A stretch of 64,000 nt of DNA from Iphione sp. A-MEVVRFRX5 (taxonomy: Eukaryota). The position numbers and the translations under genes were made by a program. Positions 15,168-43,022 of the stretch are shown here, one piece after another. Numbering within the stretch: position 1 is the first letter of the stretch; the number at the start of each line of letters is the position of its first letter. The stretch is from the NCBI GenBank assembly GCA_976226885.1, contig OZ320314.1, positions 116,498,001 to 116,562,000 on the forward strand, given 5' to 3'. The notes beneath the pieces are model-generated. The model was not told the DNA's origin and did not search any database. It worked only from the letters and a program-made list of their open reading frames with translations.

Positions 15168-17041
15168 CCATATTTACAGAAAAATACTGGCCATAAACGA
15201 CCATTGGCGGCCATACAGATCATTGGCCATTAAGACGGACGGCCTTTGCAACCATCATTCCCCATAGTCGTGGTATGTGACTGAGCCTGTTTCACAATAT
15301 CAACTCTCCATGCAGAGGCTCAGCAATTTAACATTGAGGAGCATACTCATTAAAAGATGGGAGGAAGAAGTCGCCCTCCTAGATTGAACACGAGGGAAGC
15401 AAAACCCTATCAACCAGCCAAGCGTGGAATCACCCGGTAACAACATCATTTACGTAGAATTGTCCCAATTAAACAACAGTTGCAGGAGGAGATGGAGATA
15501 ATGCATTTCCAGGAGCATCAATCTTGAGCGTAATGAATTGGGTGCTTTAAGGCAGAGTGAGGGACTGGAGTCTGAAGGGCAGAGAAAGACTCCCAGCCCG
15601 CCCGCCCAGCCCGCCGAGCCGATCCCCCCGACCTTAAATAAGGAACAAAGGGGAACGATTAACTGTCCACTGGTAAGGTTTCATTCACCGAGCTGAGAAT
15701 AACGAGGAAGAGGACAGGTAATCGCTCAGGGAAGGCATTATTAAAGGGAAATATAAGGAAACTCGAACTGGGGCAGCATGATGAAAATTCTAATGACCAA
15801 AACCTGATGGTGAATCGTTCACCAAAGCTGAAGCAATTCAACAATGGTAGCCGTGCGATAAGCATGGACAAAGGAGAAGTCCTGGAATCTGAAAAAGATA
15901 GATCCAAACGTTAGAGTCTGATAATTAGCATGATTTGAATGAAACACGTCGTGAATCTCCTCCAATTAACGGGAAAATTTGAGGTTTTTTGGTGTAACGT
16001 TGTTGAATTTCAGTACAATCTGTAAACATTTTAGTTTCCGATGGACAGTTGTTAAATTCCAACTTATATAAAATGTGAGTTCTTTATTCAAATTAAATGC
16101 AAATTCGGTAGACTTTTAACATGGTGCAAACACAAACAGGCACCTTTCCTCACAGATTTAGGTGTGTTCCTGTGTATTTCTCACACCTTTGGGTGTTCAA
16201 ATAGGTGATGTGCCACGTGTGACTACATTTAATAATTCCTTGAGCATTTTCTCACAATTCTCACAACCTATGGCGACTTTTGTCACGCCTTCTACTTGTG
16301 TGAGTAGATCCTAGTAATTCTTAACCCTTTCCTCTTCCCTTCATCACACTGTTTTCCTCGGATTTCCTGGATAGTACAGTGTAATTCCAGATTTGTACGA
16401 GTTCGACTGCTGGTGCAATGTAAGAATCGTACAGACTTATAGAAAACTTCTGGAGCTTGCAGCACCATCTTAAAATCATGCAAATTCTGAAACTTAACCT
16501 GTACAAAATCTTTGCAATTCCCCCAATGGTTGCACAATCAAGGAATCTATGAAAAGGAGACAATTTAGCTGTTTGCATCTAACATACAACTGTATGACAT
16601 GGAGCTATTCAAATTTTGTACGAGTCCTGAGTATATAAGCGGTTGGGCACAGGTTTAACATTGAACACAGGTTTAACAATGGTCTTCTTTTCATGAGAAG
16701 GTTTCTTCGCCATCAGGTAAGAATCGACACATCAGCTGGAGGTGCTTTTGGAATGTAATGGTCCCCTTCAGAGGGGAAAAAAATATTACGCCAGGAATTT
16801 TAAGACGGCATCAGTACGATGCCTGATGCATAGTTCACGTCTTTCATCTGTACGTAGCTCGTGTTCCATTCGTGGCTGTAACAGCACCAAAATGCCAATG
16901 CAGGATAAAACGATGTCTCTCATAGCAACGCATATTTATGCATTTCCACTCTCAGAAAGTATCTAGATAACCAGCATGTGTCAGCCGAAGGTATTACTCT
17001 GGAAAGCATACGTAACCGGTATGCTTTATACCTGTTTATAT

Positions 17042-17729
17042 TGTAATTCGGTTAACTCTTCCACTTGGTGTAATCCAACTAAACGCTAGCTCCCTTAGTT
17101 ACTCCACTGTAATTCCAGTGAGGCTATGTCCAGTTACTAACTCCAGGATAATTCCCCTGTTGAAATTCCCACTTGGTGAATCCAACTATTGTTAAGTGTT
17201 ATCCTGTCCCAGTTACTTCACTGTAGTCCCAGTGCGGTTACATCCAAGTGCCAACCCTGGGTAATCCAAGTGGGTTTGATATATCCCCAATCAACAAGGT
17301 CCACTAGTGAGTTCCAAGTGCAAACTGTTTTATTGGCCACACAGGGCCCATATTTATAGTCAAACTCCTGGTCATGTGATCCATACAATGTATTATTCAT
17401 GGAATAAAACTGTTACAACATGTGGTGTGTGCCTTACTCTCTACCAATCATCTCAGAGCAATCAGATACAAAGTTACAGATGCCTGGGCATCCAGGGCTC
17501 AGGGCCATACAACTTGCCTGTGGTGCCACAGGCCATGACCATTTTTCTAAATTACTACGACATAGTTACCCTGGCTGGCTGTGGTGCCGCAGCCGAGATC
17601 GTTTCTAGAGTTCACCAAGTACAGTACATGTATCTACTACTGTATACGACTGCAGTGCCACAGTCGACGTTAATTCCAGAGTTCACCAAGTACAGTACAA
17701 GTGGCTGTGGTGCCACAGACAACATTACA
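17042..17729 (-). repeat. 3' LTR
   Basis: TG...CA termini. Matches 27189-27876 except two substitutions found by eye (GTGAGTT/GTGAATT and TATTATT/TATCATT). Confidence 0.97.
17329..17358 (-). promoter_or_regulatory. LTR TATA box (TATAAATA, 17358-17351) and poly(A) signal (AATAAA, 17334-17329); equivalents in the 5' LTR at 27505-27498 and 27481-27476
   Basis: Motifs read on the - strand and positioned as expected for a U3/R boundary. Function inferred. Confidence 0.7.
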
Positions 17730-17742
17730 CTCTCCCCACCTT
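17730..17742 (-). other. Polypurine tract
   Basis: AAGGTGGGGAGAG on the - strand, abutting the TG of the 3' LTR. Confidence 0.9.
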
Positions 17743-17759
17743 AAAACAGTCCGCCGGGG

Positions 17760-18480
17760 GAAGTGCAAACCGGTTATCCTGGGAGGCACAACCTGAGCTA
17801 GCATAACTCTTCCTAGGGAGGTTAACAGTTGTCCTAACAATTCTTGGATAACTACTGGTAACTCTGGCAAAGCCTCCATAGGAGGTGATGATCATTAATA
17901 ACACTCCCAACAATTCTTGGATAACAACTAGTAACTCTGGAAAAGTCTCCATAGGAGGTAATGATCGATACTCACTAGTCATCAACGGTAACAGTCTGGA
18001 ATATGCACATACATACAGGAACAGTCTGGGATAAATGCTTACTCTGGTAAAGCCTCCTTAGGAGGTAGTGATCAATATTCACTGGTCATCAACGGTAACA
18101 GTCTGGAATATGCACGTACATACAGGAACACCCCCCTTTTAGTAATCGATTATCTGGAATGTATGCTGAATCTGGTAAAGTCTCCATGGGAGATAAAGAT
18201 GTAGTCATCACTTCTAATAAGACAAACCTGAACCCCGTTTTTTTTTTTTTTTTTGTGGGGTACAGTCCCCTCCAGTCATTACTTTGATAACACTCCACGG
18301 CCCCATAGGGGGTAACATTTGGCAAGTAACATGGGTAACAATCATCACAGATCAACATCACATTATAGCAAAACATTATAAATACTCCACCTGAGGCAGA
18401 GAACCTGAGTGTATAACCTTTTTTTTTGTGGGGTACAGTCCCCTTCAGTCACTTCCCACAACTCTCCAAACCTTAGTATC
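17760..18480. repeat. Degenerate tandem repeats in the element's 3' non-coding region
   Basis: ACTCTGG(C/A/T)AAAG(C/T)CTCCATAGGAGGT-type unit about 4 times; GTCATCAACGGTAACAGTCTGGAATATGCAC twice; TTTTTTGTGGGGTACAGTCCCC twice. Confidence 0.8.
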
Positions 18481-18650
18481 TCAGGTAACAATTACGAACA
18501 GTAAGGTTTTTATGGGGGGTAGGGTCCCCTTCTCTACCCTTTTCTTTGTAACACCCTTGTTTAACGAACCCCCCCCGACAGCTAGACTAAAGAAACCTCC
18601 AAAGGAGGTAGTCACATGCGGTGGCACAGCCTCCAGGCTTGGACGGGACC

Positions 18651-20021
18651 TTACTCCCCGTCCTTCCTCTCCTTCTCCGCTGCAGGGTGCGGTCGGCCCT
18701 CCGCCCCCTTGAGGCAGCGTCTCCACACTTCTTGTGTCCCCAGCAACAGTTGCCTGGGGGCCGAATGACGACAGACGTCATACAAGGTAGGGGACTGCTG
18801 GTCCTGCTGCATCTGCGCGTCGTCTCTTTCACGTAACCACCGAACTGCGTCGGTGGCCCTAGGGCCCCTATCTTGTCCTCCCTCCCTCTGGAGATCCTTA
18901 ATGAGGTTTTCTGCGACAGTAACGGTGTGATTGTTCCGGGCGAGTATATCGTCTACGTTTCCCCAGTCCTGCGGCTGAGGGAGTGCCATCCCGGGCAGGA
19001 GAAGGGCTGGCCTCTGTCGCAGTGGTTCCAACACAGTAGGGGGGAGTGCCCCACCTCCTTCCGCTAACTGGAGCACCCAGGCCAAAGATAATGATGTCAT
19101 CAACCGCTGGACCGGAGAGAGTGCGTCCCAGCGCGGGGGAGGCCAGGTGATGACAGGTGGTAGACGGACCGGGCCTGGCACGAGTTGGCTCCGCATAGTG
19201 GCCACATGGGGAGGGAAGAGGCCAGAGAGGATGTCCTGCACGCGTCCGGTCACATGTGGTCGCCGCCGCGGCGACAGGGTATAGGCGGCCAGCCGGGCCA
19301 GATGGCCCTCCCCCAGGAGTGAAAGCTCGTCTCGGACGCCAGCGGGCCAGGCTTTCCCTTGAGTTGGCACCCGCGATGGCGTACAGGCCGTGCCGGACCC
19401 AGGAGTGGCCGGCCGTCGTTCCTCAGGTGTTGCCGCAACCTCTCCAATCGCCGGTTCCACGGCGGGGGCCTCACAAGGTGGGGAAACCGGTGCCGCCTGT
19501 GTGGAGGAGGCAGCCCCCGACCCCTCCCCAACGGGGCCCCCGATCCTGCACTGACGGGGCAGTGGCGGGGGGTTCGCCCGTTGCGGGCATTCGGCCAACA
19601 TGTGCTCCACATCTTGTTGAGTCAGCACCCATCCCTCCTCTCGGGCCCGGCGGGCACGCATAAGAATAGTGGTCAGTTCGTCATCTGGGGCAGCGACGAT
19701 CCGAGGCCCCCCACTCACTACATCGTGGAGACATCGGTAAGGTTTTTCGGTCAAACCGAAGTCAACGGCCCAGGGGTGGTAGCGTCGCTGGTGGGTAACC
19801 CAGTAGTGTTCATCGTTTATCACCACCGAACACCAAAGGCACATAATATCACGGCCCCGCCCCCCTTCATGCTTATCATGTACATGACGATCATATGAAT
19901 CTTGATTCTTGAATGGACGTGGTACAACACACCTGGTACAGATCTTGGCCTCTGGGGTAAGCTGTAAGTCTGGTGTCAGCTTACTGGGCCACCGTTTTCC
20001 ACCTACCTTCTTGCGCGGCAT
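18651..20021 (-). CDS. Accessory ORF3 of the retrotransposon: C2H2 zinc-finger protein (456 aa from ATG 20021; frame open from 20051)
   Basis: Uninterrupted ORF, ATG in ACAATG context, basic N-terminus PRKKVGGKR. Finger 1 is C-x2-C-x14-H-x4-H (CTRC..F..Y..HVHDKH). Finger 2 is C-x2-C-x12-H-x4-H (CLWC..HQRRYH). A TEKPYRC linker-like segment follows. Confidence 0.8.
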   Translation of the reverse strand: MPRKKVGGKRWPSKLTPDLQLTPEAKICTRCVVPRPFKNQDSYDRHVHDKHEGGRGRDIMCLWCSVVINDEHYWVTHQRRYHPWAVDFGLTEKPYRCLHDVVSGGPRIVAAPDDELTTILMRARRAREEGWVLTQQDVEHMLAECPQRANPPPLPRQCRIGGPVGEGSGAASSTQAAPVSPPCEAPAVEPAIGEVAATPEERRPATPGSGTACTPSRVPTQGKAWPAGVRDELSLLGEGHLARLAAYTLSPRRRPHVTGRVQDILSGLFPPHVATMRSQLVPGPVRLPPVITWPPPRWDALSPVQRLMTSLSLAWVLQLAEGGGALPPTVLEPLRQRPALLLPGMALPQPQDWGNVDDILARNNHTVTVAENLIKDLQREGGQDRGPRATDAVRWLRERDDAQMQQDQQSPTLYDVCRHSAPRQLLLGTQEVWRRCLKGAEGRPHPAAEKERKDGE

Positions 20022-20059
20022 TGTCGGCGCTCGGTGGCTGCGGAACCACAAGCGTCTCG

Positions 20060-20190
20060 GATGCCCTCCACTCGATGCAGCTGTGGGTCCGCAGTCAGTT
20101 TATTCACCTTGTGTGTGTCCTCCTTCTGATACCCTCCACTCGGTACAGCTGTGGGTCCGCAGTCAGTTTATTCAACTTGTATGCGTCCTC
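20060..20190. repeat. 68-bp tandem duplication, each unit carrying the palindrome and a minus-strand AATAAA
   Basis: GAT(G/A)CCCTCCACTCG..CAGCTGTGGGTCCGCAGTCAGTTTATTCA at 20060 and 20128. Confidence 0.9.
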
Positions 20191-20358
20191 TACTCCCTGT
20201 GGCACCACAGCCGCCGAGCTAGCGTCGACGCTTCTGTGGTGCGGTTCCCTTCGCCTTCTTTGCCCTGGTCGTTGTTCTTACTGGTCCAGAAGGTCCAGCT
20301 TCATGTCCTCCTCTTCTTCTCCCACGCTTCCGAGCTGGAGAGCCTTATTTTGCAGTAA

Positions 20359-20730
20359 ATTATAGCAATTTAAATGCCCCAAGCCGAAATCTTCCCTAGA
20401 ATTTTGAGCCCTGGATCGAAAACGAGGCTGGGCGGAAGTTTACGTTTGGCTGCGGTTCCGCAGTCACTGTTTTTTTTCTTTTCTACCGCTGTGGGGCCAC
20501 AGGGTGGAATTTAATGCCTTTCTTTACAAAGTCGGGACCTTTTAAGCTGTTTCCGCAAATTTTCATCAGATTTTGGCAGTCAACGGACTTTCGGCGATGG
20601 GTGCCTGTGGGGCCACAGCCGCTCGGCGTACTGCGTAGTTCGGTTCCCCTCTCTTGCCTGTGGCGCCACAGTCGCTTTCCCGCTCGCGCTGCCTATAAGT
20701 ACCCTCGTTATCCAGGTCTCGGCGTTAGTT
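20359..20730. promoter_or_regulatory. Putative divergent internal promoter
   Basis: Minus-strand TATAAT (20364-20359); plus-strand TATAAG (20694-20699) with Inr-like TTAGTT at 20725-20730; four CTGYGG-NN-CCRCAG palindromes between them. Confidence 0.55.
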
Positions 20731-20758
20731 CTCCAACTGACTTCATAGGATCCACACC

Positions 20759-21022
20759 ATGGAAGGCAGCTACCATCTACCCAGTTGGCTCATGGCCTAT
20801 CCTCCTACTGTGAACCAGTAAGTTCCCTATTGTCTCCAGCTTCAGTCATTTTGTATTTGATGGTTCTGAAATTCAGTTTGTTGTTGTTAGGGTTCTGTTC
20901 AACCTTTCTCTTCATAGGTTAAGATCAGACTCTGGTGGGTGAAGCACCCCTTCATCTCCAGCCTGTGTGTCCTCCTTGCTGCCATTCAGATGGTTAGAAG
21001 GTGAGTGTCCTTGGGTGATTTA

Positions 21023-21055
<33 letters not shown>

Positions 21056-21892
21056 GTTTTGCAGGTACGCCGATTTCTTTTACCTGTGCCTCTTGGTTTT
21101 GCAGGTACGCCGATTTCTTTTACCTGTGCCTCTTGGTTTTGCAGGTACGCCGTCCCTGATGCGTACTACCGACACGTAGACGTCACCACCCCAGGGCCCT
21201 CTTTACGCGTGTACGGTCTCTACAATGTCTTGGACACGCCGCTGTACATCGCGTCGCCTGGCTATGTCCGCCTCTTTGGCCCGGATCACGTTCTGGACGT
21301 GGTGGTCCATCCTGCGGGGCCGTCGGAGCCGCCTCTTCCCACCATACACGATCCATGGTGGTGTGTCGATCGGAATGAGGCTGTCTCCCCTGACCTGGGG
21401 CTTCGGGACGTGGAAGAGACACTGGCGTCTCTCACTCCGGATCCGAGCTACACCAGTCTGGCCACCTCGTCCGCCGCTTCCTGGGCCGACTGCAGTCCTT
21501 CGGCCCCTCATGATGTTCCAGCCTGGGCCCTAGGCATAGACGATCGTGCCTCCCTCTCCTCCACCGACAGCTACGCGGGCACCGACGGGACCGCCTCGAC
21601 GCTGACGTCCAGCCGTCTCGACCCTTGGGGGTCCGACCAGGACCTCAGCGACCTGTTCTCGCCGCTGCCGTCGGCTCCTCCTTCCCCTTCCCTGTCGCTG
21701 GACTCTCCACCATGGTTCCCGGCTTCTCCCTCCTCCTCCGGCACCACTTCCATCAATGACACTCCCGACAGGGGGACCCCCCTACTAGGTCGGGCCCTGC
21801 TGGAGGAGATGCCAACTGACATTCTTTGCCAATGCTACCCAGGCCTCTGCCGGGGGGACTGCGCGTCCTTCCCGATCGTGCTGTCCGACTAA
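20759..21892 (+). CDS. Antisense spliced accessory gene (predicted exons 20759-20817, 20962-21000, 21145-21892; 281 aa), unknown function
   Basis: Donors CCA/GTAAGT (20818) and AAG/GTGAGT (21001); acceptors CTTCATCTCCAG (20961) and GGTTTTGCAG (21144). The joined exons give 846 nt in one frame ending at TAA 21892, followed by AATAAA at 21961. The last exon is better supported than exons 1-2. Confidence 0.62.
21055..21152 (+). repeat. 40-bp tandem repeat that triplicates a splice acceptor, preceded by T30
   Basis: GGTTTTGCAG/GTACGCCG with AG at 21063-64, 21103-04 and 21143-44; T-run 21025-21054. Confidence 0.9.
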
Positions 21893-21960
21893 ACGTCCGA
21901 CTATATGTGTAAATATTGTGAATATGTAAATAGATCCCGTCGCAGCATTAAGGGTTGTTA

Positions 21961-21966
21961 AATAAA
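21961..21966 (+). terminator. Poly(A) signal of the antisense gene
   Basis: AATAAA 69 nt after the stop codon, in an AT-rich island within a GC-rich region. Confidence 0.65.
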
Positions 21967-22714
21967 TTTCAGTTACCTGTTAGTCGTCTCCCTGTGGTTT
22001 TCCTTTCCGTACAGTTCTTAAGTCTTTCTCCCTCTTAAAGGTGTCCAAAGGCAGCCTCTGCTTCCCCTCGACCGGTCTACTAGAGGAAATGGACCGCAAC
22101 TGGGCCCCTCCAGAGGAAAGTGGACCGCATCTTGGCCGTGCAACCACTCCCCTTCGTCCAGAGGACAAGGACAGCATCTTGGGTAAAGTAACCCTGTCCT
22201 ACTTGTGGTCTCACCGTCTCCCGTCCGTCAATCCGTACCGAACCGTTTCGAGCTCCGCCGTCTCCGGGACGTTCACTCCCTACCCGCTTCATAAACGTTT
22301 CGCGTGCTCCAAGGTGTTCATCCTCCCTCCGCAGGCCTTTCGTGCATCTCCAGGAGGTCCGTCCTCCTACCTGGACTTTCTGGGCCGGGTCAAACCCCAG
22401 GATGTCCATCCTCCTCCAGGGAATTTCGGATGCGAAATACGCTTTCGGGCGTTCCCTTTTCGCCCCACGGACTTTTCGAGCGCTACCAGGGGGCCTCCCC
22501 TCTTCACAGGTCGTTTCAAGCCGATGGCTTCCGGGTCGCCTGTCGCACCCATAGTGGCCATTTCGAGCCCTTCCGGCTCCGGGCGGGCCGTCGCCCTCCA
22601 TGAACCTTTTCGAGCATCGCCAGGACGTTTATCATCCTACCTTCCGACTCGCTATTCCTTCCGAGTCTGCGGGACACTGGGTCCCAGCGGGCTTCCTCGC
22701 CCCCCATCTCCTTA

Positions 22715-25700
22715 TCAGGCCTTTCGGGAAGAGGTCTCGCCCCTCGCGGGAGGGACGGGGGCCTCGCTTTTCCTGCGCCAGGAGATGATCCACCGGGGTA
22801 ATTGATCCCCCCGGTACGGCCGTAGACGGTTCCTATGTATGACTTTCGGCCTTGCCTGCTTCGAGCGTTGTACCACCATTCGCTCATCGTCCAGGGCCCG
22901 TATGACTAGCCACGGTCCCGACCAAGGGAAATGGGTTTTGGGACTCTTTCCTTTCGGGGGTTGGGCTTCATGGAGCCATACCGCCGCCCCTGCCTCCAAG
23001 GCGTCTCCCCTCACCCTCCGATCGTATGCCCGGGCCTGGGCTCGGGCCGCCGTGCCCAGCTTCTCCCGGACTCTACTGTACGCTGCTTGGAGACGCCGAA
23101 CCATTCCTCCCACGGGATCAGGTAAGTCCTCCGTAGTAGGAGTCTTTTGAGGGAGACCATCCACCGCATGCACTGGAAGGGTTATCTCCCGCCCGAACAT
23201 GAGGTAGTTCGGAGTGTAACCAGTGCTAGCCTGGGGTGAAGCGCGGTAAGCCATCATCAGGAAAGGAAGTGCGGTGTCCCACTCATCCCGACTCTCAAAG
23301 CAGTGTGCCTTGATCATTTTTCCAAGTGTGCGAAAACTTCGTTCAATGAAACCGTCGCTCTGTGGATGGCGGGGGGTGGTTCTGGTCTTCTTAATGTCAA
23401 GGTAGTCGCAGAGAGCTGTGATGATCTCGCTGCAGAAGTTAGTTCCTTGGTCGCTGTGTAGTTCGTGGAAGCAGCCATAACGGGCGATTACCTCTTCCGC
23501 CAAAATCCGAGCAACCTGAGGAGCCTTTTGGTCTGGTAGCGGGAATGCCTCAAGCCACTTGGTGAAATGGTCGCCCACCATCAAGATATAGCGGTTCCCT
23601 CGTTCAGTCAGCGGCAGAGGTCCCGCCACATCCATGGACCATCGCTCCATGGGCTCCCCTGGCAAATAAGATTTGAGTGGCACTTGGGGACGGAGTGGGT
23701 TCTGGTTCAGCAGGGCGCAGTGACAGCTCTTGCACCAAGTTGCGATGTCTTCTCTCATCCCTGGCCAATAGTAAGCCAACGATACCAGGTAAGTGGTTCG
23801 CTCGGCGGCCAGGTGCGCCCCGGTTTGCCCCGCGTGTACTTCCTTGAAGGCCTTTTCGCGGAGTACGGCTGGTAGGACCACCTGCAGTCGAGAGGGGTCC
23901 CCCCCAAGGCCAGTCCATCTGCGTTGCAGAAGACCATCCGTCAAGGTGAGTCGGCTCCACTGTCGCCAGAGGCTCTTAGTCACAGCTGACAATGGGGCCA
24001 CCCACTCCCAGGGGGGTTGTTGAGGGTCCAGTTCCAGGGCTTTAAGGATCGGCCCCACACACTCGTCCTGGAGTTGAGCCGTTCTCAGTTCTGGATGTTG
24101 GGTCCCCACCGCCTGGCTGCGGGTTACCACCCTCACCTTCTGGGTTACCCCCTCTTCAAGAAGGTGTTCCTGTTTACACTGCCGACAGGGTTGGCGGGAG
24201 AGGGCATCCGCATTGGCATTCAGTCGGCCAGCTCGGTGCTCCAAGTGAACATTGTACTGCCCTACCCGTTCCAGCCAGCGTGCCAGTTGCCCCTCCGGAT
24301 CCTTGATCCGACGGAGCCAGCTTACGGCTCCGTTATCAGTACGCACAGTGACTTCTTGTCCATACAGGTAGAAGTGGAAATGTTTCAGGGCCGCTACCAC
24401 CGCGAGCAGCTCCCTACGCATCACACAATACCGCCGCTCAGGTTCGCTCAGACTGCGGCTATAGTATGCCAGTACTACCTCTCGTCCCTCCTGCCATTGG
24501 GCGAGCACGGCCCCCAGCCCCACATTGCTGGCATCCGTGTCTAGGAAGTAGCGTCCCTCAGGTCGTGGGTACCCCAGGATCGGGCTGGTAGCGAGGGCTG
24601 ACTTTAGCTCCTGAAAGGCCTTTTCTTCCGGCTTTCCCCATGTGAACGGTGTCTTGGCACTGGTTAGCTGGTTCAGAGGGGCTGCCACATTCGCAAAGTG
24701 TGGTACGTAACGCCGGTAATACGAACAGAGGCCTAAGAAGGCGCGCACCTCTGTCGTGCAGGTTGGAGTTGGCCATTCCTCAATGTCCTTCGTCTTGCTG
24801 GGATCTGTAGCCACCCCTTTAGGCGAGACGATATGTCCTAAAAAACCTATTTCTTGCAGGAACAGCTGACATTTTGACGGTTTCAGCTTCAGTCCTGCCG
24901 CCGAGAGCCGCGTCAACACCCGATCCAAGCGGGCCAGGGTTTTCTGGAAGGTCCTTCCGAACACCAGTATGTCATCGAGGTACACTAGACATTGTTCCCA
25001 CGTCAAGCCACGTAACACTGTGTCCATCAGGCGCTCGAACGTTGCTGGTGCATTGATCAACCCAAATGGCATGACGGTAAACTCGTATAGTCCTATGGAC
25101 ATGGAGAATGCCGTCTTCTCCCGATCTTCTGGGTGCATTTGAACCTGCCAGTATCCGGATGCCAAATCCAGGGAGCAGAAATATTTAGCTCCCGACAAGG
25201 TACTCAATGAGTCATCGATCCTTGGTAGTGGGTAGGCGTCAACCTTCGTCTTCTCATTTAATTTCCTATAGTCGACGCAGAACCGAGTGGTCCCATCTTT
25301 CTTTCTCACCATCACTACCGGGCTAGACCACGGGCTGCTACTCTCGACAATCACTCCCTGGTTTTTCATTTCATTCACCAGCTTCCGTTCCTCTTGTCTT
25401 TTTGCGAAGGGCATGCGCCGTGGGGGCTGCTTGATAGGATGTGGATCTTCGGTGTAAATGCGATGTTGTACTACATCTGTGCACCCTAGGTCACCCCGGT
25501 CCCGGGCAAAGGCCAGACTGTGTTTCCTGAGCAACCGCCTCAAACGTCCCTGCTGGTCCGGGGTAAGGGTCTTCGTGGTGGACCCCACCAACTCCTGTAT
25601 CACGTCAGCCACTGCCCTTCTTATGGCACACACACTCTTCTGAGGAGTCACTGACGTTTCATCCCAGGGACGGGCGGGGACCCCCACAGCCACCTGGGTT

Positions 25701-26344
25701 CCCTGTTTCAGGAATATTTCCAATTCGGTCGTGTTCCACATGGGCAGGGTGGCTTCCACCAGGCATCTCATTCCTATCACCCCGTTATTCCACTGTGAAT
25801 CCAGCAGCCCTTCAATCATCAGGGGTGCCCCCCCATTGTGGTTCACTAGCACAGCAACCCCCTCCCCAGGTGGCAGAGTCACATCGTGAGCCACTCGGAT
25901 CTCCACCTCCCGTTTCACCACCCGGCGGCATCTAGGGACGTCATTTTTCAGGGCTATCTCTTGTTTGGCTAGATCGATCACCGCCTTATGCTGGCACAGG
26001 AAGTCACTACCTAGGATGCCATCTTCTTCTACTTCAGCCACTAGGAAATGGTGTGGAAAACTCTTGCCCGCTATTTCTAATTTGCAGGTGCGGTGTCCCA
26101 AAGTAGGGATAACATGCCCTCCCGCCCCAGTGATACACGTCAGTGAACCCCTCTCCTCCAGGCCAGGGACCACACGGGGGTTAACAATGGATACCTCGAC
26201 ACCAGTATCAATCAACAGTTCTAACAATCTTCCATCAAGGCTTACCTTCAGTCGTGGTCCCTGACCTGGTTCCATTGTAGTCCCCGTTAAAGCTATCCCA
26301 GTCGTACCATCCTGGCCTAATTGGTCGACTGAGATCCGTTTCCC
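22715..26344 (-). CDS. pol: Pol polyprotein (protease, RT, RNase H, integrase with GPY/F-type C-terminus), expressed by -1 frameshift
   Basis: LIDTG protease; VVMVRKKDGTTRFCVDYRKLN and YLDD RT; DTDASNVGLGAVL RNase H; integrase H..H/C..C, DVAGPL, SDQG, GFIER and WSGPW. The frame is open from the slippery site to the stop. No chromodomain seen. Confidence 0.97.
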   Translation of the reverse strand, partial: GKRISVDQLGQDGTTGIALTGTTMEPGQGPRLKVSLDGRLLELLIDTGVEVSIVNPRVVPGLEERGSLTCITGAGGHVIPTLGHRTCKLEIAGKSFPHHFLVAEVEEDGILGSDFLCQHKAVIDLAKQEIALKNDVPRCRRVVKREVEIRVAHDVTLPPGEGVAVLVNHNGGAPLMIEGLLDSQWNNGVIGMRCLVEATLPMWNTTELEIFLKQGTQVAVGVPARPWDETSVTPQKSVCAIRRAVADVIQELVGSTTKTLTPDQQGRLRRLLRKHSLAFARDRGDLGCTDVVQHRIYTEDPHPIKQPPRRMPFAKRQEERKLVNEMKNQGVIVESSSPWSSPVVMVRKKDGTTRFCVDYRKLNEKTKVDAYPLPRIDDSLSTLSGAKYFCSLDLASGYWQVQMHPEDREKTAFSMSIGLYEFTVMPFGLINAPATFERLMDTVLRGLTWEQCLVYLDDILVFGRTFQKTLARLDRVLTRLSAAGLKLKPSKCQLFLQEIGFLGHIVSPKGVATDPSKTKDIEEWPTPTCTTEVRAFLGLCSYYRRYVPHFANVAAPLNQLTSAKTPFTWGKPEEKAFQELKSALATSPILGYPRPEGRYFLDTDASNVGLGAVLAQWQEGREVVLAYYSRSLSEPERRYCVMRRELLAVVAALKHFHFYLYGQEVTVRTDNGAVSWLRRIKDPEGQLARWLERVGQYNVHLEHRAGRLNANADALSRQPCRQCKQEHLLEEGVTQKVRVVTRSQAVGTQHPELRTAQLQDECVGPILKALELDPQQPPWEWVAPLSAVTKSLWRQWSRLTLTDGLLQRRWTGLGGDPSRLQVVLPAVLREKAFKEVHAGQTGAHLAAERTTYLVSLAYYWPGMREDIATWCKSCHCALLNQNPLRPQVPLKSYLPGEPMERWSMDVAGPLPLTERGNRYILMVGDHFTKWLEAFPLPDQKAPQVARILAEEVIARYGCFHELHSDQGTNFCSEIITALCDYLDIKKTRTTPRHPQSDGFIERSFRTLGKMIKAHCFESRDEWDTALPFLMMAYRASPQASTGYTPNYLMFGREITLPVHAVDGLPQKTPTTEDLPDPVGGMVRRLQAAYSRVREKLGTAARAQARAYDRRVRGDALEAGAAVWLHEAQPPKGKSPKTHFPWSGPWLVIRALDDERMVVQRSKQARPKVIHRNRLRPYRGDQLPRWIISWRRKSEAPVPPARGETSSRKA
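26292..26344 (-). other. -1 ribosomal frameshift signal (GGGAAAC plus downstream stem-loop)
   Basis: G GGA AAC at 26344-26338 near the end of gag; a -1 slip enters the pol frame. Hairpin CAGTCG-ACCA...TGGT-A-CGACTG starts 6 nt downstream. Confidence 0.85.
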
Positions 26345-27156
26345 TGTAACTCAGGGCAATCACGCCGGAAATGGCCCTCTTGTCCACATTGGAAACATTT
26401 AGTGTAGCGCGGCCTCTTGTTCCTTGCTTCCTCTCGAGCTTGCATCTCTTCTCGGATCTTGGCAAGTTCCTTAGTGAGCTCTTCCATAGGCTTCGTCCAC
26501 GCTGGGGTCGGCGGGGCCTGTACCACCTGTACCCTCTTAGCAACGAATCGTTCCTGAGTCTCCACCACCTGTACTGCCGCGTCCAACGTCGTGCACTTCG
26601 CCTCCAGGCATTTGAGGTGGAGGGAGTCGACCAACGATCGCTGAAAGGCAGCCACGGCGGCCAGTTCCCGAGTCTCCCCGGACACGTCGGGGTAGGCACT
26701 CCTTACCAGACGCCTCACCCTGTCAGCCAGGTCCCGGACATCCTCGTCCTTCTGCCTGCGGATGCTAGAGAGCTTCTGCATGGCCACCACCCGGTCGCGT
26801 CGCCTGCCAAAACGTCGTTCAAGCGCCGTCACACGGGATCCATAATCCCGCTTGTCCTCCGGTGGTAAATCTCCATAATACATACGCGCTGGGCCGGTGA
26901 GCGAAAGCGTCAGGGCAGAACAGCGGGTGTTCTCACTCCACTTGCAAGCGTCCGCCCACTCTGTGAACTGTCCTATCCAACTGTCCCAATCCACAGTCTT
27001 CCCATCGAAGCGTTCAGGCTTCATGGCGTTCATCTTTAAGGGTTCCTCCGGGGCTAGTTCAAACTGCTCACCTTCTTCTTCCTCCTCGCCCGCATGTGCT
27101 GGGCTGGGAACCCGAATTTGCACTTCCTCATCCACTGCCACGTACTGAGTTGCCAT
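26317..27156 (-). CDS. gag: Gag (279 aa)
   Basis: KPERFDG..W..F capsid-like start; CFQCGQEGHFRRDC CCHC zinc knuckle; begins 13 nt after the PBS. Confidence 0.95.
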   Translation of the reverse strand: MATQYVAVDEEVQIRVPSPAHAGEEEEEGEQFELAPEEPLKMNAMKPERFDGKTVDWDSWIGQFTEWADACKWSENTRCSALTLSLTGPARMYYGDLPPEDKRDYGSRVTALERRFGRRRDRVVAMQKLSSIRRQKDEDVRDLADRVRRLVRSAYPDVSGETRELAAVAAFQRSLVDSLHLKCLEAKCTTLDAAVQVVETQERFVAKRVQVVQAPPTPAWTKPMEELTKELAKIREEMQAREEARNKRPRYTKCFQCGQEGHFRRDCPELQGNGSQSTN

Positions 27157-27169
27157 CTTGCTGTTGAGG

Positions 27170-27187
27170 ATCCCACCGCTGCCACCA
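27170..27187 (-). other. Primer-binding site complementary to tRNA-Leu
   Basis: TGGTGGCAGCGGTGGGAT, 1 nt inside the 5' LTR, complementary to the 3' end ...AUCCCACCGCUGCCA-CCA known from metazoan tRNA-Leu(AAG). Confidence 0.88.
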
Positions 27188-27188
27188 G

Positions 27189-27876
27189 TGTAATTCGGTT
27201 AACTCTTCCACTTGGTGTAATCCAACTAAACGCTAGCTCCCTTAGTTACTCCACTGTAATTCCAGTGAGGCTATGTCCAGTTACTAACTCCAGGATAATT
27301 CCCCTGTTGAAATTCCCACTTGGTGAATCCAACTATTGTTAAGTGTTATCCTGTCCCAGTTACTTCACTGTAGTCCCAGTGCGGTTACATCCAAGTGCCA
27401 ACCCTGGGTAATCCAAGTGGGTTTGATATATCCCCAATCAACAAGGTCCACTAGTGAATTCCAAGTGCAAACTGTTTTATTGGCCACACAGGGCCCATAT
27501 TTATAGTCAAACTCCTGGTCATGTGATCCATACAATGTATCATTCATGGAATAAAACTGTTACAACATGTGGTGTGTGCCTTACTCTCTACCAATCATCT
27601 CAGAGCAATCAGATACAAAGTTACAGATGCCTGGGCATCCAGGGCTCAGGGCCATACAACTTGCCTGTGGTGCCACAGGCCATGACCATTTTTCTAAATT
27701 ACTACGACATAGTTACCCTGGCTGGCTGTGGTGCCGCAGCCGAGATCGTTTCTAGAGTTCACCAAGTACAGTACATGTATCTACTACTGTATACGACTGC
27801 AGTGCCACAGTCGACGTTAATTCCAGAGTTCACCAAGTACAGTACAAGTGGCTGTGGTGCCACAGACAACATTACA
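27189..27876 (-). repeat. 5' LTR
   Basis: See 3' LTR; adjacent to the PBS. Confidence 0.97.
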
Positions 27877-27904
27877 ATATAATCAACTCAGAGATGAGCA
27901 GACT

Positions 27905-42178: not shown

Positions 42179-42440
42179 ATGAAGATCGGGCTCACCGTGC
42201 TGCTGTGTTTGGTCATTGTGCTGGTGATCGCTTCCATCCTCTGTCATGTCGTCGCTCTAGCCACGGACTACTGGCTCAAGTCGAGCTCGTCTGGCCAGAC
42301 GGACTTTCTCAACCTCGGCCTGTTCGTCGCCTGCTTCCACGAGTACGTGCACCCGCACGACAACCCACCTCGGACCTACGATGGCTGCCACTATCTCGAA
42401 TCCAACTACTACTCGACCATCAGGGACTGGCTGGTTCCAG
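42179..42440 (+). CDS. Claudin-like (PMP22/EMP/MP20/claudin superfamily; Sinuous/Kune/Megatrachea-like) coding exon 1
   Basis: MKIGLTVLLCLVIVLVIASILCHVVALATDYW..NLGLFVAC..YDGCHY..IRDWLVP. TM1, the W-LGL-C signature and the second loop Cys are present; donor G/GTAGGC. Confidence 0.9.
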
Positions 42441-43022
42441 GTAGGCTTTCAACATTACCTGAACCATATACCTCTCTAACCTGCTACACTGTAGAAGATA
42501 GCTTCATACATATATGTTGGCCTCCCCCCCCCTCTCCCGCGACGACGACGACCACCACCACCACCGCCACCGCGATAGCCATTGATATACCCCACGGTGA
42601 ATGGTGTATAGTCACTGCGAGCCGCCATACACAAACACCGTTACAAACAAACACACCCACACGCGTCTGAACACATCCCAAATGCTCCTTGCTAGGGGCC
42701 ATCTAGAAAAGTAGGTCGCAACGACCAAACAGCCGTGTGCGGTGTAGGATTCTGCTGCTGCTGGCCTTTCGTTGGTGCAGAGGGTTGAGTCATGACCACT
42801 AACATAGCTGTGGCCGTACCAATCTCGTTTTAAAAGTCGAGTCACATATTACATTCTTTACTTAAGCCCAAGGACGGTTAATCTGTCTGTTAAATCATGT
42901 CACTCCCCCCCCCCGCCCCCTACTCGCCCACAAGCATTTCCTTCAGGTTCCCAAAAGGACATTGCTCATCAGAAGGATTCTGATTCTGAATTTTTCGTAT
43001 CGTAGACGTCCACACATTGGTT

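What the first reader, a model, noticed from the sequence alone, without database searches (positions are those of the whole stretch)
17042..27876. A 'complex' Gypsy retrotransposon: gag-pol plus a divergent pair of accessory genes sharing a cis-element with the LTR
Seen: a 10.8-kb intact element whose 5-kb pol-to-LTR interval has no env-like ORF. It holds a sense C2H2 zinc-finger ORF and an antisense gene with splice signals, head-to-head around a region studded with the same 14-bp palindrome found in U3. Known: foamy viruses use an internal promoter and the self-encoded transactivator Tas acting on both the LTR and the internal promoter; HTLV-1 has Tax and the spliced antisense HBZ. Simple Gypsy elements lack such circuits. 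Inferred: this element encodes its own transcriptional switch. LTRs differ at only 2 of 688 sites and the ORFs are intact, so it is recent and may be active. I cannot tell without a search whether the family is already described.
Basis: partly seen in the sequence, partly recalled or inferred. Interest (0 to 1): 0.9.

Follow-up and report, generated by a model that had tools for sequence, protein, structure and literature searches.

The report
Gypsy retrotransposon with two extra genes
An intact, recently inserted Gypsy-type retrotransposon in an animal genome carries two extra orphan genes, back to back around an internal promoter that shares a 14-base palindrome with the element's own LTR promoter; the layout is real and unusual for an animal element, but nothing yet shows that the element controls its own transcription.

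Summary
A 10,835-bp Ty3/Gypsy element lies on the minus strand at 17042-27876. Its 688-bp LTRs differ at 2 sites. It has a 4-bp ATAT duplication, PBS, PPT, intact gag and pol, and a -1 frameshift heptamer.

[quoted passage not shown] They hold:
- a sense 456-aa ORF3 with two N-terminal C2H2-like fingers;
- an antisense unit with a TATA box, Kozak ATG, short exon, AT-rich intron, 249-codon exon and AATAAA.

The two diverge from a roughly 700-bp region. The dyad CTGYGGNNCCRCAG occurs 13 times in 64 kb, all inside the element: 3 per U3 and 7 internal, against 0 expected.

Both proteins are orphans, with no homologue, Pfam or PDB hit, and the structure models are unusable. No second copy of the family could be retrieved.

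The nearest relative has 46% pol identity, the same PBS start and the same ATAT duplication. It also has a long post-pol region whose first sense ORF opens with a similar finger pair. That ORF has 427 cluster members and dN/dS of 0.3-0.8. It lacks the dyad and a conserved antisense gene. Three more distant relatives are compact gag-pol elements.

The "self-encoded switch" stays untested. Extra ORFs, antisense genes and internal promoters are already known in Gypsy elements. I call this a new variant of a known kind.

The parts
17042..27876 (-). Whole LTR retrotransposon, 10,835 bp, GC 0.55 in a host background of GC 0.41
27189..27876 (-). 5' LTR, 688 bp, TG..CA. Dyads at 27852-27865, 27797-27810 (degenerate), 27726-27739 and 27665-27678. 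TATAAA at 27500-27505, AATAAA at 27476-27481
17042..17729 (-). 3' LTR, 2 differences from the 5' LTR. Dyads at 17705-17718, 17650-17663 (degenerate), 17579-17592 and 17518-17531
17038..17041 (.). Target-site duplication ATAT; the second copy is at 27877-27880
27170..27187 (-). Primer-binding site, starting TGG one base after the LTR. Its first 14 nt are identical to the PBS of the L001 family
26317..27156 (-). gag, 279 aa, CCHC zinc knuckle, intact
26338..26344 (-). GGGAAAC heptamer (X XXY YYZ in the gag frame), inside the 34-nt gag/pol overlap. Candidate -1 ribosomal frameshift site
22715..26275 (-). pol, 1186 aa from the first ATG; the frame is open from 26350. Protease, RT, RNase H, integrase; intact
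21986..22714 (-). Non-coding spacer after pol, with three degenerate ~35-nt units, two of which form the same small hairpin
20694..21966 (+). Antisense transcription unit (model). TATAAG 20694-20699. Exon 1 at 20759-20817 (ATG in ACACCATGG). Optional out-of-frame exon at 20918-21000. T30 plus a 40-bp acceptor unit repeated 2.5 times at 21025-21152. Main exon 21145-21892. AATAAA at 21961-21966. Predicted product is 268 aa, acidic, Ser/Pro-rich and without lysine in the main exon
20022..20758 (.). Divergent control region with eight dyads: 20038-20051 (degenerate), 20081-20094, 20149-20162, 20197-20210, 20450-20463, 20489-20502, 20605-20618 and 20658-20671. Four lie in the ~330 bp between the two TATA-like boxes. 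Four lie in or next to two 68-bp tandem repeats (20060-20190)
20282..20374 (-). Sense-side TATA-like boxes (TTTAAAT 20368-20374, TATAAT 20359-20364) and a candidate 23-nt first exon (ATG at 20304, ending ACCA|GTAAG). Joined to the acceptor that ends at 20038 (exon from 20037), the frame stays open into ORF3. This is a model only
18651..20021 (-). ORF3, 456 aa from the ATG. N-terminal basic cluster. Two C-x2-C...H-x4-H fingers at residues 28-51 and 61-82. The rest is Pro/Ala/Arg-rich. An orphan
17730..18650 (-). 3' untranslated region with 107-bp tandem repeats (17934-18130) and the polypurine tract (17730-17742). It has no poly(A) signal of its own, so ORF3 transcripts would end in the 3' LTR

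Best explanation
This is an intact, very recently inserted Ty3/Gypsy (Metaviridae-type) LTR retrotransposon. [quoted passage not shown]

That region holds two extra transcription units, started back to back from an internal TATA-type promoter pair:
- On the sense side is ORF3, a basic protein with two fingers. Its transcript would end in the 3' LTR.
- On the antisense side is an intron-bearing unit that encodes an acidic, Ser/Pro-rich protein.

The 14-bp dyad has conserved 6-bp half-sites and a free 2-bp centre. It is most simply read as the binding site of a dimeric sequence-specific DNA-binding protein. Its presence in U3 and around the internal promoters would make the LTR promoter and the accessory genes respond to the same factor.

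Shown: the anatomy, the intactness, the non-random dyad, and the coding signal of ORF3. Also shown is the retention, under purifying selection, of a similarly placed finger ORF in the nearest relative.

Inferred: promoter use, splicing, translation of the antisense ORF, protein binding to the dyad, and co-regulation.

The identity of the factor is open. I put about 30% on ORF3 itself and about 45% on a host transcription factor.
For: - Anatomy and intactness.
- Dyad: 13 exact matches against 0 expected, all in the element. None in 15 other loci totalling about 210 kb. LTR-to-internal similarity is limited to the motif. The centre varies while the half-sites are kept.
- Geometry: in U3 the dyads lie 160-360 bp upstream of TATAAA. 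Internally, four dyads fill the 330 bp between the two TATA-like boxes.
- Symmetry: both sides show TATA-like box, about 60 nt, ATG, then a short exon ending in the same 9-mer ACCAGTAAG. That 9-mer occurs nowhere else in the 64 kb.
- ORF3 coding: open-frame length beyond all shuffles, gag-pol-like codon use in its own frame only, and the finger pair in 0 of 20000 shuffles.
- Antisense unit: the intron has GC 0.37-0.41 against 0.53-0.64 in the exons, exactly one acceptor is in frame, and AATAAA lies 68 nt after the stop.
- Lineage: the nearest relative (L001 family) has 57% identity in the RT-IN core, the same PBS start, the same ATAT duplication, and is GC-rich in an AT-rich host. It has an 8-kb post-pol region whose first sense ORF starts with a similar finger pair.
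- That ORF has 427 cluster members. Its dN/dS is 0.30-0.76, against 0.05-0.12 for pol (Fisher P = 6e-7). All eight Cys/His ligands are invariant in 14 members, while 16 of 70 residues in that segment vary.
- Precedents: internal and antisense promoters in Gypsy elements (PMC7264820, PMC4402516).
Against: - Only one copy of this family is available, so there is no conservation test for ORF3, the antisense ORF or the dyads.
- Homology of ORF3 to the relative's finger ORF is not significant: BLAST E = 0.047 and 1.2, hhalign E = 0.053 with 1% probability.
- The relative has neither the dyad nor a conserved antisense gene, and its gene order differs.
- The antisense ORF scores about zero on the gag-pol codon model, and its length alone has P about 0.02.
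- The sense-side 'intron' is not AT-rich.
- Introns were placed by reading consensus signals. No splice predictor was used, and no relative shares them.
- There are no expression data. Both structure models are unusable, with pLDDT 39 and 40.
Confidence: 0.55

Rival explanations
1. One reading: a self-encoded switch. ORF3 would bind the dyads as a dimer, with two fingers covering each 6-bp half-site. Alone or with the acidic antisense protein as an activation module, it would drive or repress both the LTR and the internal promoter. This resembles a transactivator with an internal promoter in complex retroviruses.
For: - Two fingers per monomer match a 6-bp half-site, and the dyad symmetry fits a dimer.
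- ORF3 has an N-terminal basic cluster.
- The antisense product is strongly acidic, with 32 D+E against 10 K+R. It has a DLSDLF-type acidic-hydrophobic motif and no lysine.
- The dyads lie in U3 and at both internal promoters.
- A finger ORF is retained under selection in the sister family.
Against: - There is no likeness to any known DNA-binding regulator. Both proteins have no Pfam family at E <= 0.1 and no PDB relative. ORF3 has no homologue among 1.84 billion representatives.
- The fingers have H-x4-H spacing and long Cys-His spacers. The relative's pair resembles zf-Di19 and CEP104-type fingers only below threshold. Such fingers need not bind DNA.
- The sister family keeps the finger ORF without any dyad. 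So the ORF's conserved role does not require this motif.
Confidence: 0.25
2. The accessory products act after transcription, and the dyads are host-factor enhancer sites. ORF3 would be a nuclear RNA-handling protein that helps export or protect unspliced genomic RNA, as CERV does in Cer1. The antisense unit would act mainly as RNA, pairing with genomic RNA or feeding small-RNA pathways, rather than through its protein.
For: - CERV is likewise an orphan post-pol ORF. It is nuclear, has a basic signal and a possible zinc finger, and is needed for genomic RNA export (PMC10309623).
- The coding evidence for the antisense ORF is weak.
- A review of plant elements raises regulatory antisense RNA as an option (PMC7264820).
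- The finger ORF persists in the sister family without the dyad.
- A repeated small hairpin lies in the spacer after pol.
Against: - There is no sequence likeness to CERV or any RNA-binding family.
- The antisense unit has a good Kozak ATG, an in-frame splice and a poly(A) signal placed as for a coding mRNA.
- The dyads cluster tightly at the accessory promoters, which suggests dedicated control.
Confidence: 0.3
3. Passenger sequence. The post-pol region would be captured host or foreign DNA, or leftover sequence, with chance ORFs and no role in the element's life cycle.
For: - GC-rich DNA gives long chance ORFs. Several ORFs of 150-250 codons overlap here on both strands.
- Both proteins are orphans.
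- The post-pol regions of the two related families share no detectable similarity.
Against: - GC content, CpG content and codon use of ORF3 match gag-pol rather than the host flanks.
- The ORF3 frame exceeds all shuffles.
- The region shares its dyad with the U3 of the same element.
- No conserved host gene matches it.
- No internal LTR, duplication or second element was found.
- The sister family keeps its finger ORF intact in hundreds of copies with dN/dS below 1.
Confidence: 0.1
4. The dyads are not promoter elements. They would be chromatin-boundary or insulator-type sites, or structure-prone DNA, in the way the host zinc-finger protein Su(Hw) binds a site cluster in Drosophila gypsy.
For: - The copies are clustered, closely spaced (39-116 bp) and in two blocks.
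- A host-protein site array inside a Gypsy element has a precedent (PMC4935592, and my own knowledge of the gypsy insulator).
Against: - The blocks sit exactly upstream of three TATA-type boxes: U3 and both internal sides.
- A 6-bp arm with a 2-nt centre cannot form a stable hairpin or cruciform.
Confidence: 0.1

Closest known systems
Plant Retand/Tat-type Gypsy elements (Grande, RIRE2, Retand)
   Same: - A long pol-to-3'LTR region of 2.9-6.6 kb.
- Antisense ORFs of unknown function, suspected to bind DNA.
- An own internal antisense promoter (Grande gene23).
- Tandem-repeat arrays in that region (PMC7264820, PMC11963269).
   Different: - They live in plants, and their pol is unrelated at lineage level. 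Here the nearest pols come from animals.
- Their antisense proteins carry the TRP28 domain, which I could not compare.
- No sense finger ORF paired head to head, and no motif shared with U3, is described in the parts of those two papers that I read (an abstract and a term search).
Caenorhabditis elegans Cer1 and its CERV protein
   Same: [quoted passage not shown]
- The product is nuclear, has a basic signal and a possible zinc finger, and regulates the element's own RNA (PMC10309623).
   Different: - CERV is made from a five-exon spliced mRNA that begins in gag.
- It acts on RNA export, not on transcription.
- No antisense partner or shared promoter motif is reported.
- There is no sequence similarity to ORF3.
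Oikopleura Tor elements
   Same: An animal Gypsy-like element in which a post-pol gene is transcribed from an internal promoter independent of the LTR (PMC4402516).
   Different: The gene there is env. No antisense gene, finger protein or LTR-shared motif is involved.
Complex retroviruses (spumavirus transactivator with internal promoter; deltaretrovirus transactivator plus spliced antisense gene)
   Different: - There is no env.
- pol is Metaviridae-type.
- Neither accessory protein matches any Pfam family or solved structure.
- The resemblance is of layout only.
L001 family (unnamed Gypsy family in ENA assembly ERZ25767047)
   Same: - The nearest pol: 46% identity overall and 57% in the RT-IN core.
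- An identical PBS start and the same ATAT duplication.
- A GC-rich element in an AT-rich host.
- A long post-pol region whose first sense ORF opens with two C-x2-C...H-x4-H fingers joined by an [ED]-G-x-R-x-R linker.
   Different: - It is about 14.2 kb.
- Its finger ORF is 921 aa and not significantly similar to ORF3.
- It has no dyad.
- Its antisense ORFs are not kept between copies, and they lie after the finger ORF, not before it.

Membership tests
Ty3/Gypsy (Metaviridae-type) LTR retrotransposon | Direct LTRs with TG..CA ends, flanked by a short target-site duplication | tested here: met
   688-bp LTRs, 2 differences, ATAT/ATAT flanks
Ty3/Gypsy (Metaviridae-type) LTR retrotransposon | PBS next to the 5' LTR and a polypurine tract next to the 3' LTR | tested here: met
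   The PBS starts TGG one base after the LTR, and a purine tract abuts the 3' LTR. The primer tRNA was not identified with a tool
Ty3/Gypsy (Metaviridae-type) LTR retrotransposon | gag with a CCHC knuckle; pol domain order protease, RT, RNase H, integrase | tested here: met
   Pfam hits in that order, all above cut-off for RT, RNase H and integrase
Complex retrovirus with its own transactivator | Accessory protein homologous to a known retroviral transactivator or antisense regulator | tested here: not met
   Both proteins have no Pfam family at E <= 0.1, no homologue in the word-indexed protein search and no PDB match. ORF3 also has no homologue among the HMMER representatives
Complex retrovirus with its own transactivator | An env gene and a Retroviridae-type pol | tested here: not met
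   No env-like ORF and no transmembrane segment. The nearest pols are Gypsy-type elements of animals
Complex retrovirus with its own transactivator | The same response element in the LTR and at an internal promoter, bound by the element's own protein | not testable with these tools
   The shared motif is present. Binding and promoter activity cannot be read from the sequence
Gypsy elements with antisense additional ORF (Retand/Grande type) | A long pol-to-3'LTR region with an antisense ORF and tandem repeats | tested here: met
   A 4,985-bp region, an antisense unit at 20694-21966, and repeats of 107, 68 and 40 bp
Gypsy elements with antisense additional ORF (Retand/Grande type) | TRP28 domain in the antisense protein | not tested
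   No reference for that domain was available in the libraries offered. Pfam gives nothing
Gypsy elements with antisense additional ORF (Retand/Grande type) | Plant host and placement of RT in the Retand lineage | tested here: not met
   The named hits among the best pol matches are all from animals: pseudoscorpion, fishes, sponge, sea cucumber, insect, spider. The host flank has a claudin-type exon
Classical C2H2 zinc-finger proteins (Pfam zf-C2H2) | A match to the family profile above its cut-off | tested here: not met
   zf-C2H2_4 at E = 0.29 and zf-C2H2 at E = 3, both far below cut-off. Only the ligand pattern is present
Finger ORF of the L001 family | Significant sequence or profile similarity | tested here: inconclusive
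   BLAST E = 0.047 (C-terminal stretch) and 1.2 (fingers); hhalign E = 0.053 with 1% probability. The ligand pattern, linker, N-terminal position and rank as first sense ORF after pol agree

The most novel reading that the evidence does not exclude
An animal Gypsy retrotransposon runs an autonomous regulatory circuit. A bidirectional internal promoter expresses a dimeric two-finger DNA-binding protein and an acidic partner. These act through the 14-bp dyad on both the internal promoter and the LTR. This would be a retrovirus-like 'complex' regulatory layer that arose independently in Metaviridae.
Probability: 0.2. Interest if true: 0.85.

Novelty: new variant of a known kind. Interest (0 to 1): 0.55.

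Why it matters
LTR retrotransposons are usually taken to depend on host factors for transcription. Self-encoded regulators are seen as a hallmark of complex retroviruses.

An animal Gypsy lineage would show something different if three things held. It would need to keep a finger protein under selection, to have added in one family an antisense spliced gene, and to share a promoter motif between the LTR and the internal region. Regulatory complexity would then have arisen repeatedly outside Retroviridae.

Even on the modest reading, in which a host factor binds the dyad, the element would still be useful. It is a compact natural example of an LTR promoter and a bidirectional internal promoter wired to one motif. 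It also adds an animal counterpart to the plant elements whose antisense ORFs remain unexplained.

Tried and rejected
**Homology searches**
- ORF3 and the main antisense exon gave nothing in the word-indexed search.
- The all-against-all HMMER search with ORF3 gave one hit. It proved to be a repetitive bacterial surface protein in a prokaryotic contig, so I rejected it as spurious.
- PDB sequence searches gave nothing.

**Structure**
- Both AlphaFold models were of low confidence, pLDDT 39 and 40.
- I therefore ran no fold search, because matches to such models are meaningless.

**Other copies of the family**
- None is in the window.
- The exact pol and ORF3 sequences are not in the protein collection.
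- The best pol hits are at most 47% identical.
- The metagenome scan gave only distant fragments.
- So dN/dS and motif conservation could not be tested for this family. I did that test on the nearest relative instead.

**Other checks**
- LTR-derived origin of the internal control region: rejected, because similarity stops at the motif.
- An analogous shared motif in the L001 family: not found.
- Host identity: no tRNA or Rfam hit. There is only a claudin-type exon and CpG o/e of about 0.6. A PDB search with that exon was empty.
- PBS tRNA: no tRNA gene lies in the window or in any fetched locus, so I left it unnamed.
- A literature search for the 14-mer found nothing relevant.


Full report
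**1. What is there**

The window has no N. A pair of 688-bp direct repeats lies at 17042-17729 and 27189-27876. They have TG..CA ends and differ at 2 positions. The coding strand of the element is the window's minus strand.

Around the element the plus strand reads ...ATAT[element]ATAT..., a 4-bp target-site duplication. A purine run (17730-17742) abuts the 3' LTR. A primer-binding site starting TGG lies one base after the 5' LTR, at 27170-27187, only 13 nt before the gag ATG.

- gag (27156-26317, 279 aa) has a CCHC knuckle.
- pol (26275-22715, 1186 aa) has protease, RT, RNase H and integrase in the Gypsy order.
- pol is in the -1 frame. Its frame is open from 26350, which gives a 34-nt overlap with gag. 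The overlap contains GGGAAAC in the X XXY YYZ register of the gag frame, the classical form of a -1 slippery site (the rule is established knowledge).

No gene of the element is broken. The element has GC 0.55 against 0.41 for the flanks. With 0.29% LTR divergence the insertion is young. I give no absolute date, because the host's substitution rate is unknown.

**2. The pol-to-LTR interval (4,985 bp)**

Reading 5' to 3' on the sense strand, the interval holds five parts.

(a) A non-coding spacer of about 730 bp, with three degenerate 35-nt units.

(b) An antisense transcription unit on the plus strand.
- TATAAG lies at 20694, and ACACCATGG with its ATG at 20759.
- A 59-nt exon ends CA|GTAAGT.
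- An AT-rich stretch follows (GC 0.37-0.41 against 0.53-0.64 in the exons), with an optional 83-nt exon that would introduce a stop.
- Then come a T30 run and a 40-bp unit carrying TTTTGCAG|G, repeated 2.5 times at 100% identity.
- The 249-codon exon ends at 21892, and AATAAA lies at 21961.
- Only the third acceptor (21145) gives an open frame, of 268 codons.

(c) A control region (20022-20758) with eight dyads.

(d) ORF3 (20021-18651).

(e) A 3' untranslated region with 107-bp repeats and no poly(A) signal of its own.

Neither product has a hydrophobic segment of transmembrane grade or any Pfam match at E <= 0.1. So there is no env.

A note on method for the splice models:
- I placed the introns by reading consensus signals. 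No splice predictor placed them, and no relative shares them.
- I joined the exons only inside two scripts, to count frames and stops. One search printed the first 25 residues of the sense-side model.
- I sent no joined sequence to a search or folding tool. Searches used the main exon by reference.

**3. Are the extra ORFs genes?**

ORF3:
- Its open frame of 482 codons exceeds the longest frame in all 2000 block shuffles, whose maximum was 396.
- Under a codon model trained on gag and pol, only its own frame scores positive: +0.12 per codon, against -0.18 to -0.33 for the other five frames.
- Residues 28-51 and 61-82 form two C-x2-C...H-x4-H units. Such a pair arose in 0 of 20000 shuffles of the protein.
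- The units are sub-threshold for Pfam zf-C2H2 models.

I take ORF3 as a real gene with about 85% confidence.

Antisense ORF:
- Its frame is the best of six, but scores about zero.
- Its length alone has P about 0.02.
- Its case rests on the ordered set of signals and the intron-exon composition contrast.
- Its product would be acidic, with 32 D+E against 10 K+R in the main exon. It would be Ser/Pro-rich and lack lysine in that exon.

I put about 55-60% on it being translated.

**4. The palindrome**

CTGYGGNNCCRCAG has 13 exact matches in 64 kb. All lie in the element, with none in 100 dinucleotide-preserving shuffles. There are three per U3 and seven between 20081 and 20671. One degenerate copy per LTR and one at 20038 add to these.

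- The half-sites are kept (15 CTGTGG and 5 CTGCGG among the ten distinct exact sites), while the central two bases vary freely.
- That is the pattern of a dimeric protein site. It is not the pattern of an RNA hairpin, which a 2-nt loop would forbid.
- Similarity between the LTR and the internal region stops at the motif. The internal block is therefore not an LTR fragment.
- The motif is absent from all 15 other loci fetched.

Geometry:
- In U3 the sites lie 160-360 bp upstream of TATAAA (LTR position 372).
- Four internal sites fill the roughly 330 bp between TATAAG (plus strand, 20694) and TTTAAAT/TATAAT (minus strand, 20374-20359).
- The other four lie in or next to two 68-bp repeats, between the sense TATA-like box and the ORF3 ATG.

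The unit is symmetric. On each strand a TATA-like box is followed after about 60 nt by an ATG and a short exon ending ACCA|GTAAG. The 9-mer ACCAGTAAG occurs only at these two places in the window. On the sense side, joining that 23-nt exon to the acceptor that ends at 20038 (exon from 20037) keeps the frame open into ORF3. That 'intron' is not AT-rich, so I hold the sense splice model loosely.

**5. Relatives**

No other copy or fragment lies in the window. The exact pol and ORF3 sequences are not in the protein collection. The best pol matches are 38-47% identical and, where named, come from animals. A metagenome scan gave only distant fragments.

The nearest relative is P0002 (57% identity in the RT-IN core). 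It belongs to a high-copy family in ENA assembly ERZ25767047, with 777 pol cluster members. In locus L001 that family shows:
- identical 716-bp LTRs;
- the same first 14 nt of the PBS;
- again an ATAT/ATAT duplication;
- GC 0.57-0.66 in a host of GC 0.32-0.38;

Its first sense ORF after pol (921 aa) opens with two C-x2-C...H-x4-H units joined by the same kind of [ED]-G-x-R-x-R linker.

- That ORF's 90% cluster has 427 members.
- Among four copies its dN/dS is 0.30-0.76, against 0.05-0.12 for pol and 0.02 for gag. The deficit of replacement changes is significant (Fisher P = 6e-7).
- The eight ligand residues are invariant in 14 members, while 16 of 70 residues in that segment vary.

So in the sister family the finger ORF is a selected gene.

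Its homology to the window's ORF3 is suggestive only. There are two collinear weak matches (E = 0.047 and 1.2), and hhalign gives E = 0.053 with 1% probability.

The sister family has no dyad and no other motif clearly shared between LTR and interior. Its antisense ORFs differ between copies. One copy (L013) lacks that region altogether.

Breaks seen in those copies: gag is interrupted once in L001, and pol once in L014. I did not determine the kind of break.

Three more distant relatives (L010, L011, L015) are compact gag-pol elements. For L010 and L011 the LTR-to-LTR spacing is 5.5-5.6 kb. L015 is read from the gene order on a 5.5-kb contig.

The long accessory region is therefore a derived trait of the window element and the L001 family, or it was gained twice.

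**6. Explanation and rivals**

The best-supported reading is an intact Gypsy element with two accessory transcription units under an internal bidirectional promoter. A dimeric DNA-binding factor would couple that promoter to the LTR promoter through the dyad.

Two fingers match a 6-bp half-site, and the acidic partner could serve as an activation module. Neither observation is a test. The sister family keeps its finger ORF without any dyad, so I give this step about 25-30%.

A role in RNA handling, like that of CERV in Cer1 (PMC10309623), is at least as likely, and the two are not exclusive. So is a regulatory role of the antisense RNA itself (PMC7264820).

A passenger or junk origin is unlikely. 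Composition and codon use match the rest of the element, the U3 motif is shared, and no host homologue exists.

**7. Comparison with what is known**

Several precedents already exist:
[quoted passage not shown] Grande gene23 has its own promoter and a nuclear product. Retand elements have 2.9-6.6 kb post-pol regions, antisense ORFs with a probably DNA-binding domain, and tandem repeats (PMC7264820, PMC11963269).
- In animals, Cer1 encodes CERV (PMC10309623).
- Tor elements use an internal promoter (PMC4402516).
- Bdelloid elements carry varied third ORFs (PMC5408684).

I did not find three things described together: a divergent pair of accessory genes in an animal Gypsy element, a motif shared between U3 and the internal promoters, and a finger ORF conserved across sister families. 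I could not consult Repbase, Dfam or GyDB.

My verdict is a new variant of a known kind, with interest 0.55.

**8. Slips and limits**

- That breaks the rule against sequences from memory.
The primer tRNA and any named host factor are therefore left open.
- I took no contig for human.
I did not use the consensus lines that the alignment tools print by themselves.

Noticed in passing
window 17038-17041 and 27877-27880; L001 8339-8342 and 22580-22583: Both the window element and its nearest relative are flanked by the same 4-bp duplication, ATAT. They also share the first 14 nt of the PBS. This suggests a lineage-wide preference for an ATAT target and a common primer tRNA.
   Followed up: partly
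window 22338-22372, 22385-22419, 22608-22642 (sense = minus strand): The spacer after pol has three degenerate ~35-nt units. Two of them fold into the same 7-bp hairpin, with one G-C to U-G change (z = -1.7 and -2.1). This could be an RNA element of the genomic transcript.
   Followed up: partly
window 20998, 23119, 23786, 23943 (plus strand): Four of the six perfect MAGGTRAGT donor-type sites in the window lie on the antisense strand inside the element, where about 0.2 are expected. The three within pol fall in three different codon phases, so no repeated peptide explains them. This remains unexplained.
   Followed up: partly
window 21025-21152: A T30 run is followed by a 40-bp unit that carries the antisense acceptor, repeated 2.5 times at 100% identity. 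This is a very recent tandem duplication, and only the last copy is in frame.
   Followed up: yes
window 20172 and 20104 (minus strand): Two sense-strand AATAAA motifs sit inside the 68-bp repeats just upstream of ORF3. They could end a gag-pol mRNA early or act as TATA-like boxes for ORF3. No poly(A) signal lies between the ORF3 stop and the 3' LTR.
   Followed up: no
window 17042-18650 compared with 18651-27156: CpG observed/expected is 0.29 in the LTR and 0.34 in the 3' untranslated region. It is 0.69-0.96 in the rest of the element and about 0.6 in the host flanks.
   Followed up: no
window 42179-42670 (+): An ORF in the host flank just reaches the Pfam Claudin_2 cut-off (29.4 bits against 29.1). 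Together with CpG o/e of about 0.6, this points to an animal host, probably an invertebrate. The species was not identified.
   Followed up: partly
L012 14762-16016; L013 10613-11428: In the relative's genome, one copy is followed directly by a second element that shares an LTR. Another copy is a shorter derivative that lacks everything after the finger ORF and has a truncated 3' LTR.
   Followed up: no
L001 17640-17928 and 20575-21468: The relative's post-pol region carries 96-bp and 99-bp tandem arrays, and the 99-bp array differs in copy number between copies. This resembles the repeat expansion described for plant Retand elements.
   Followed up: no
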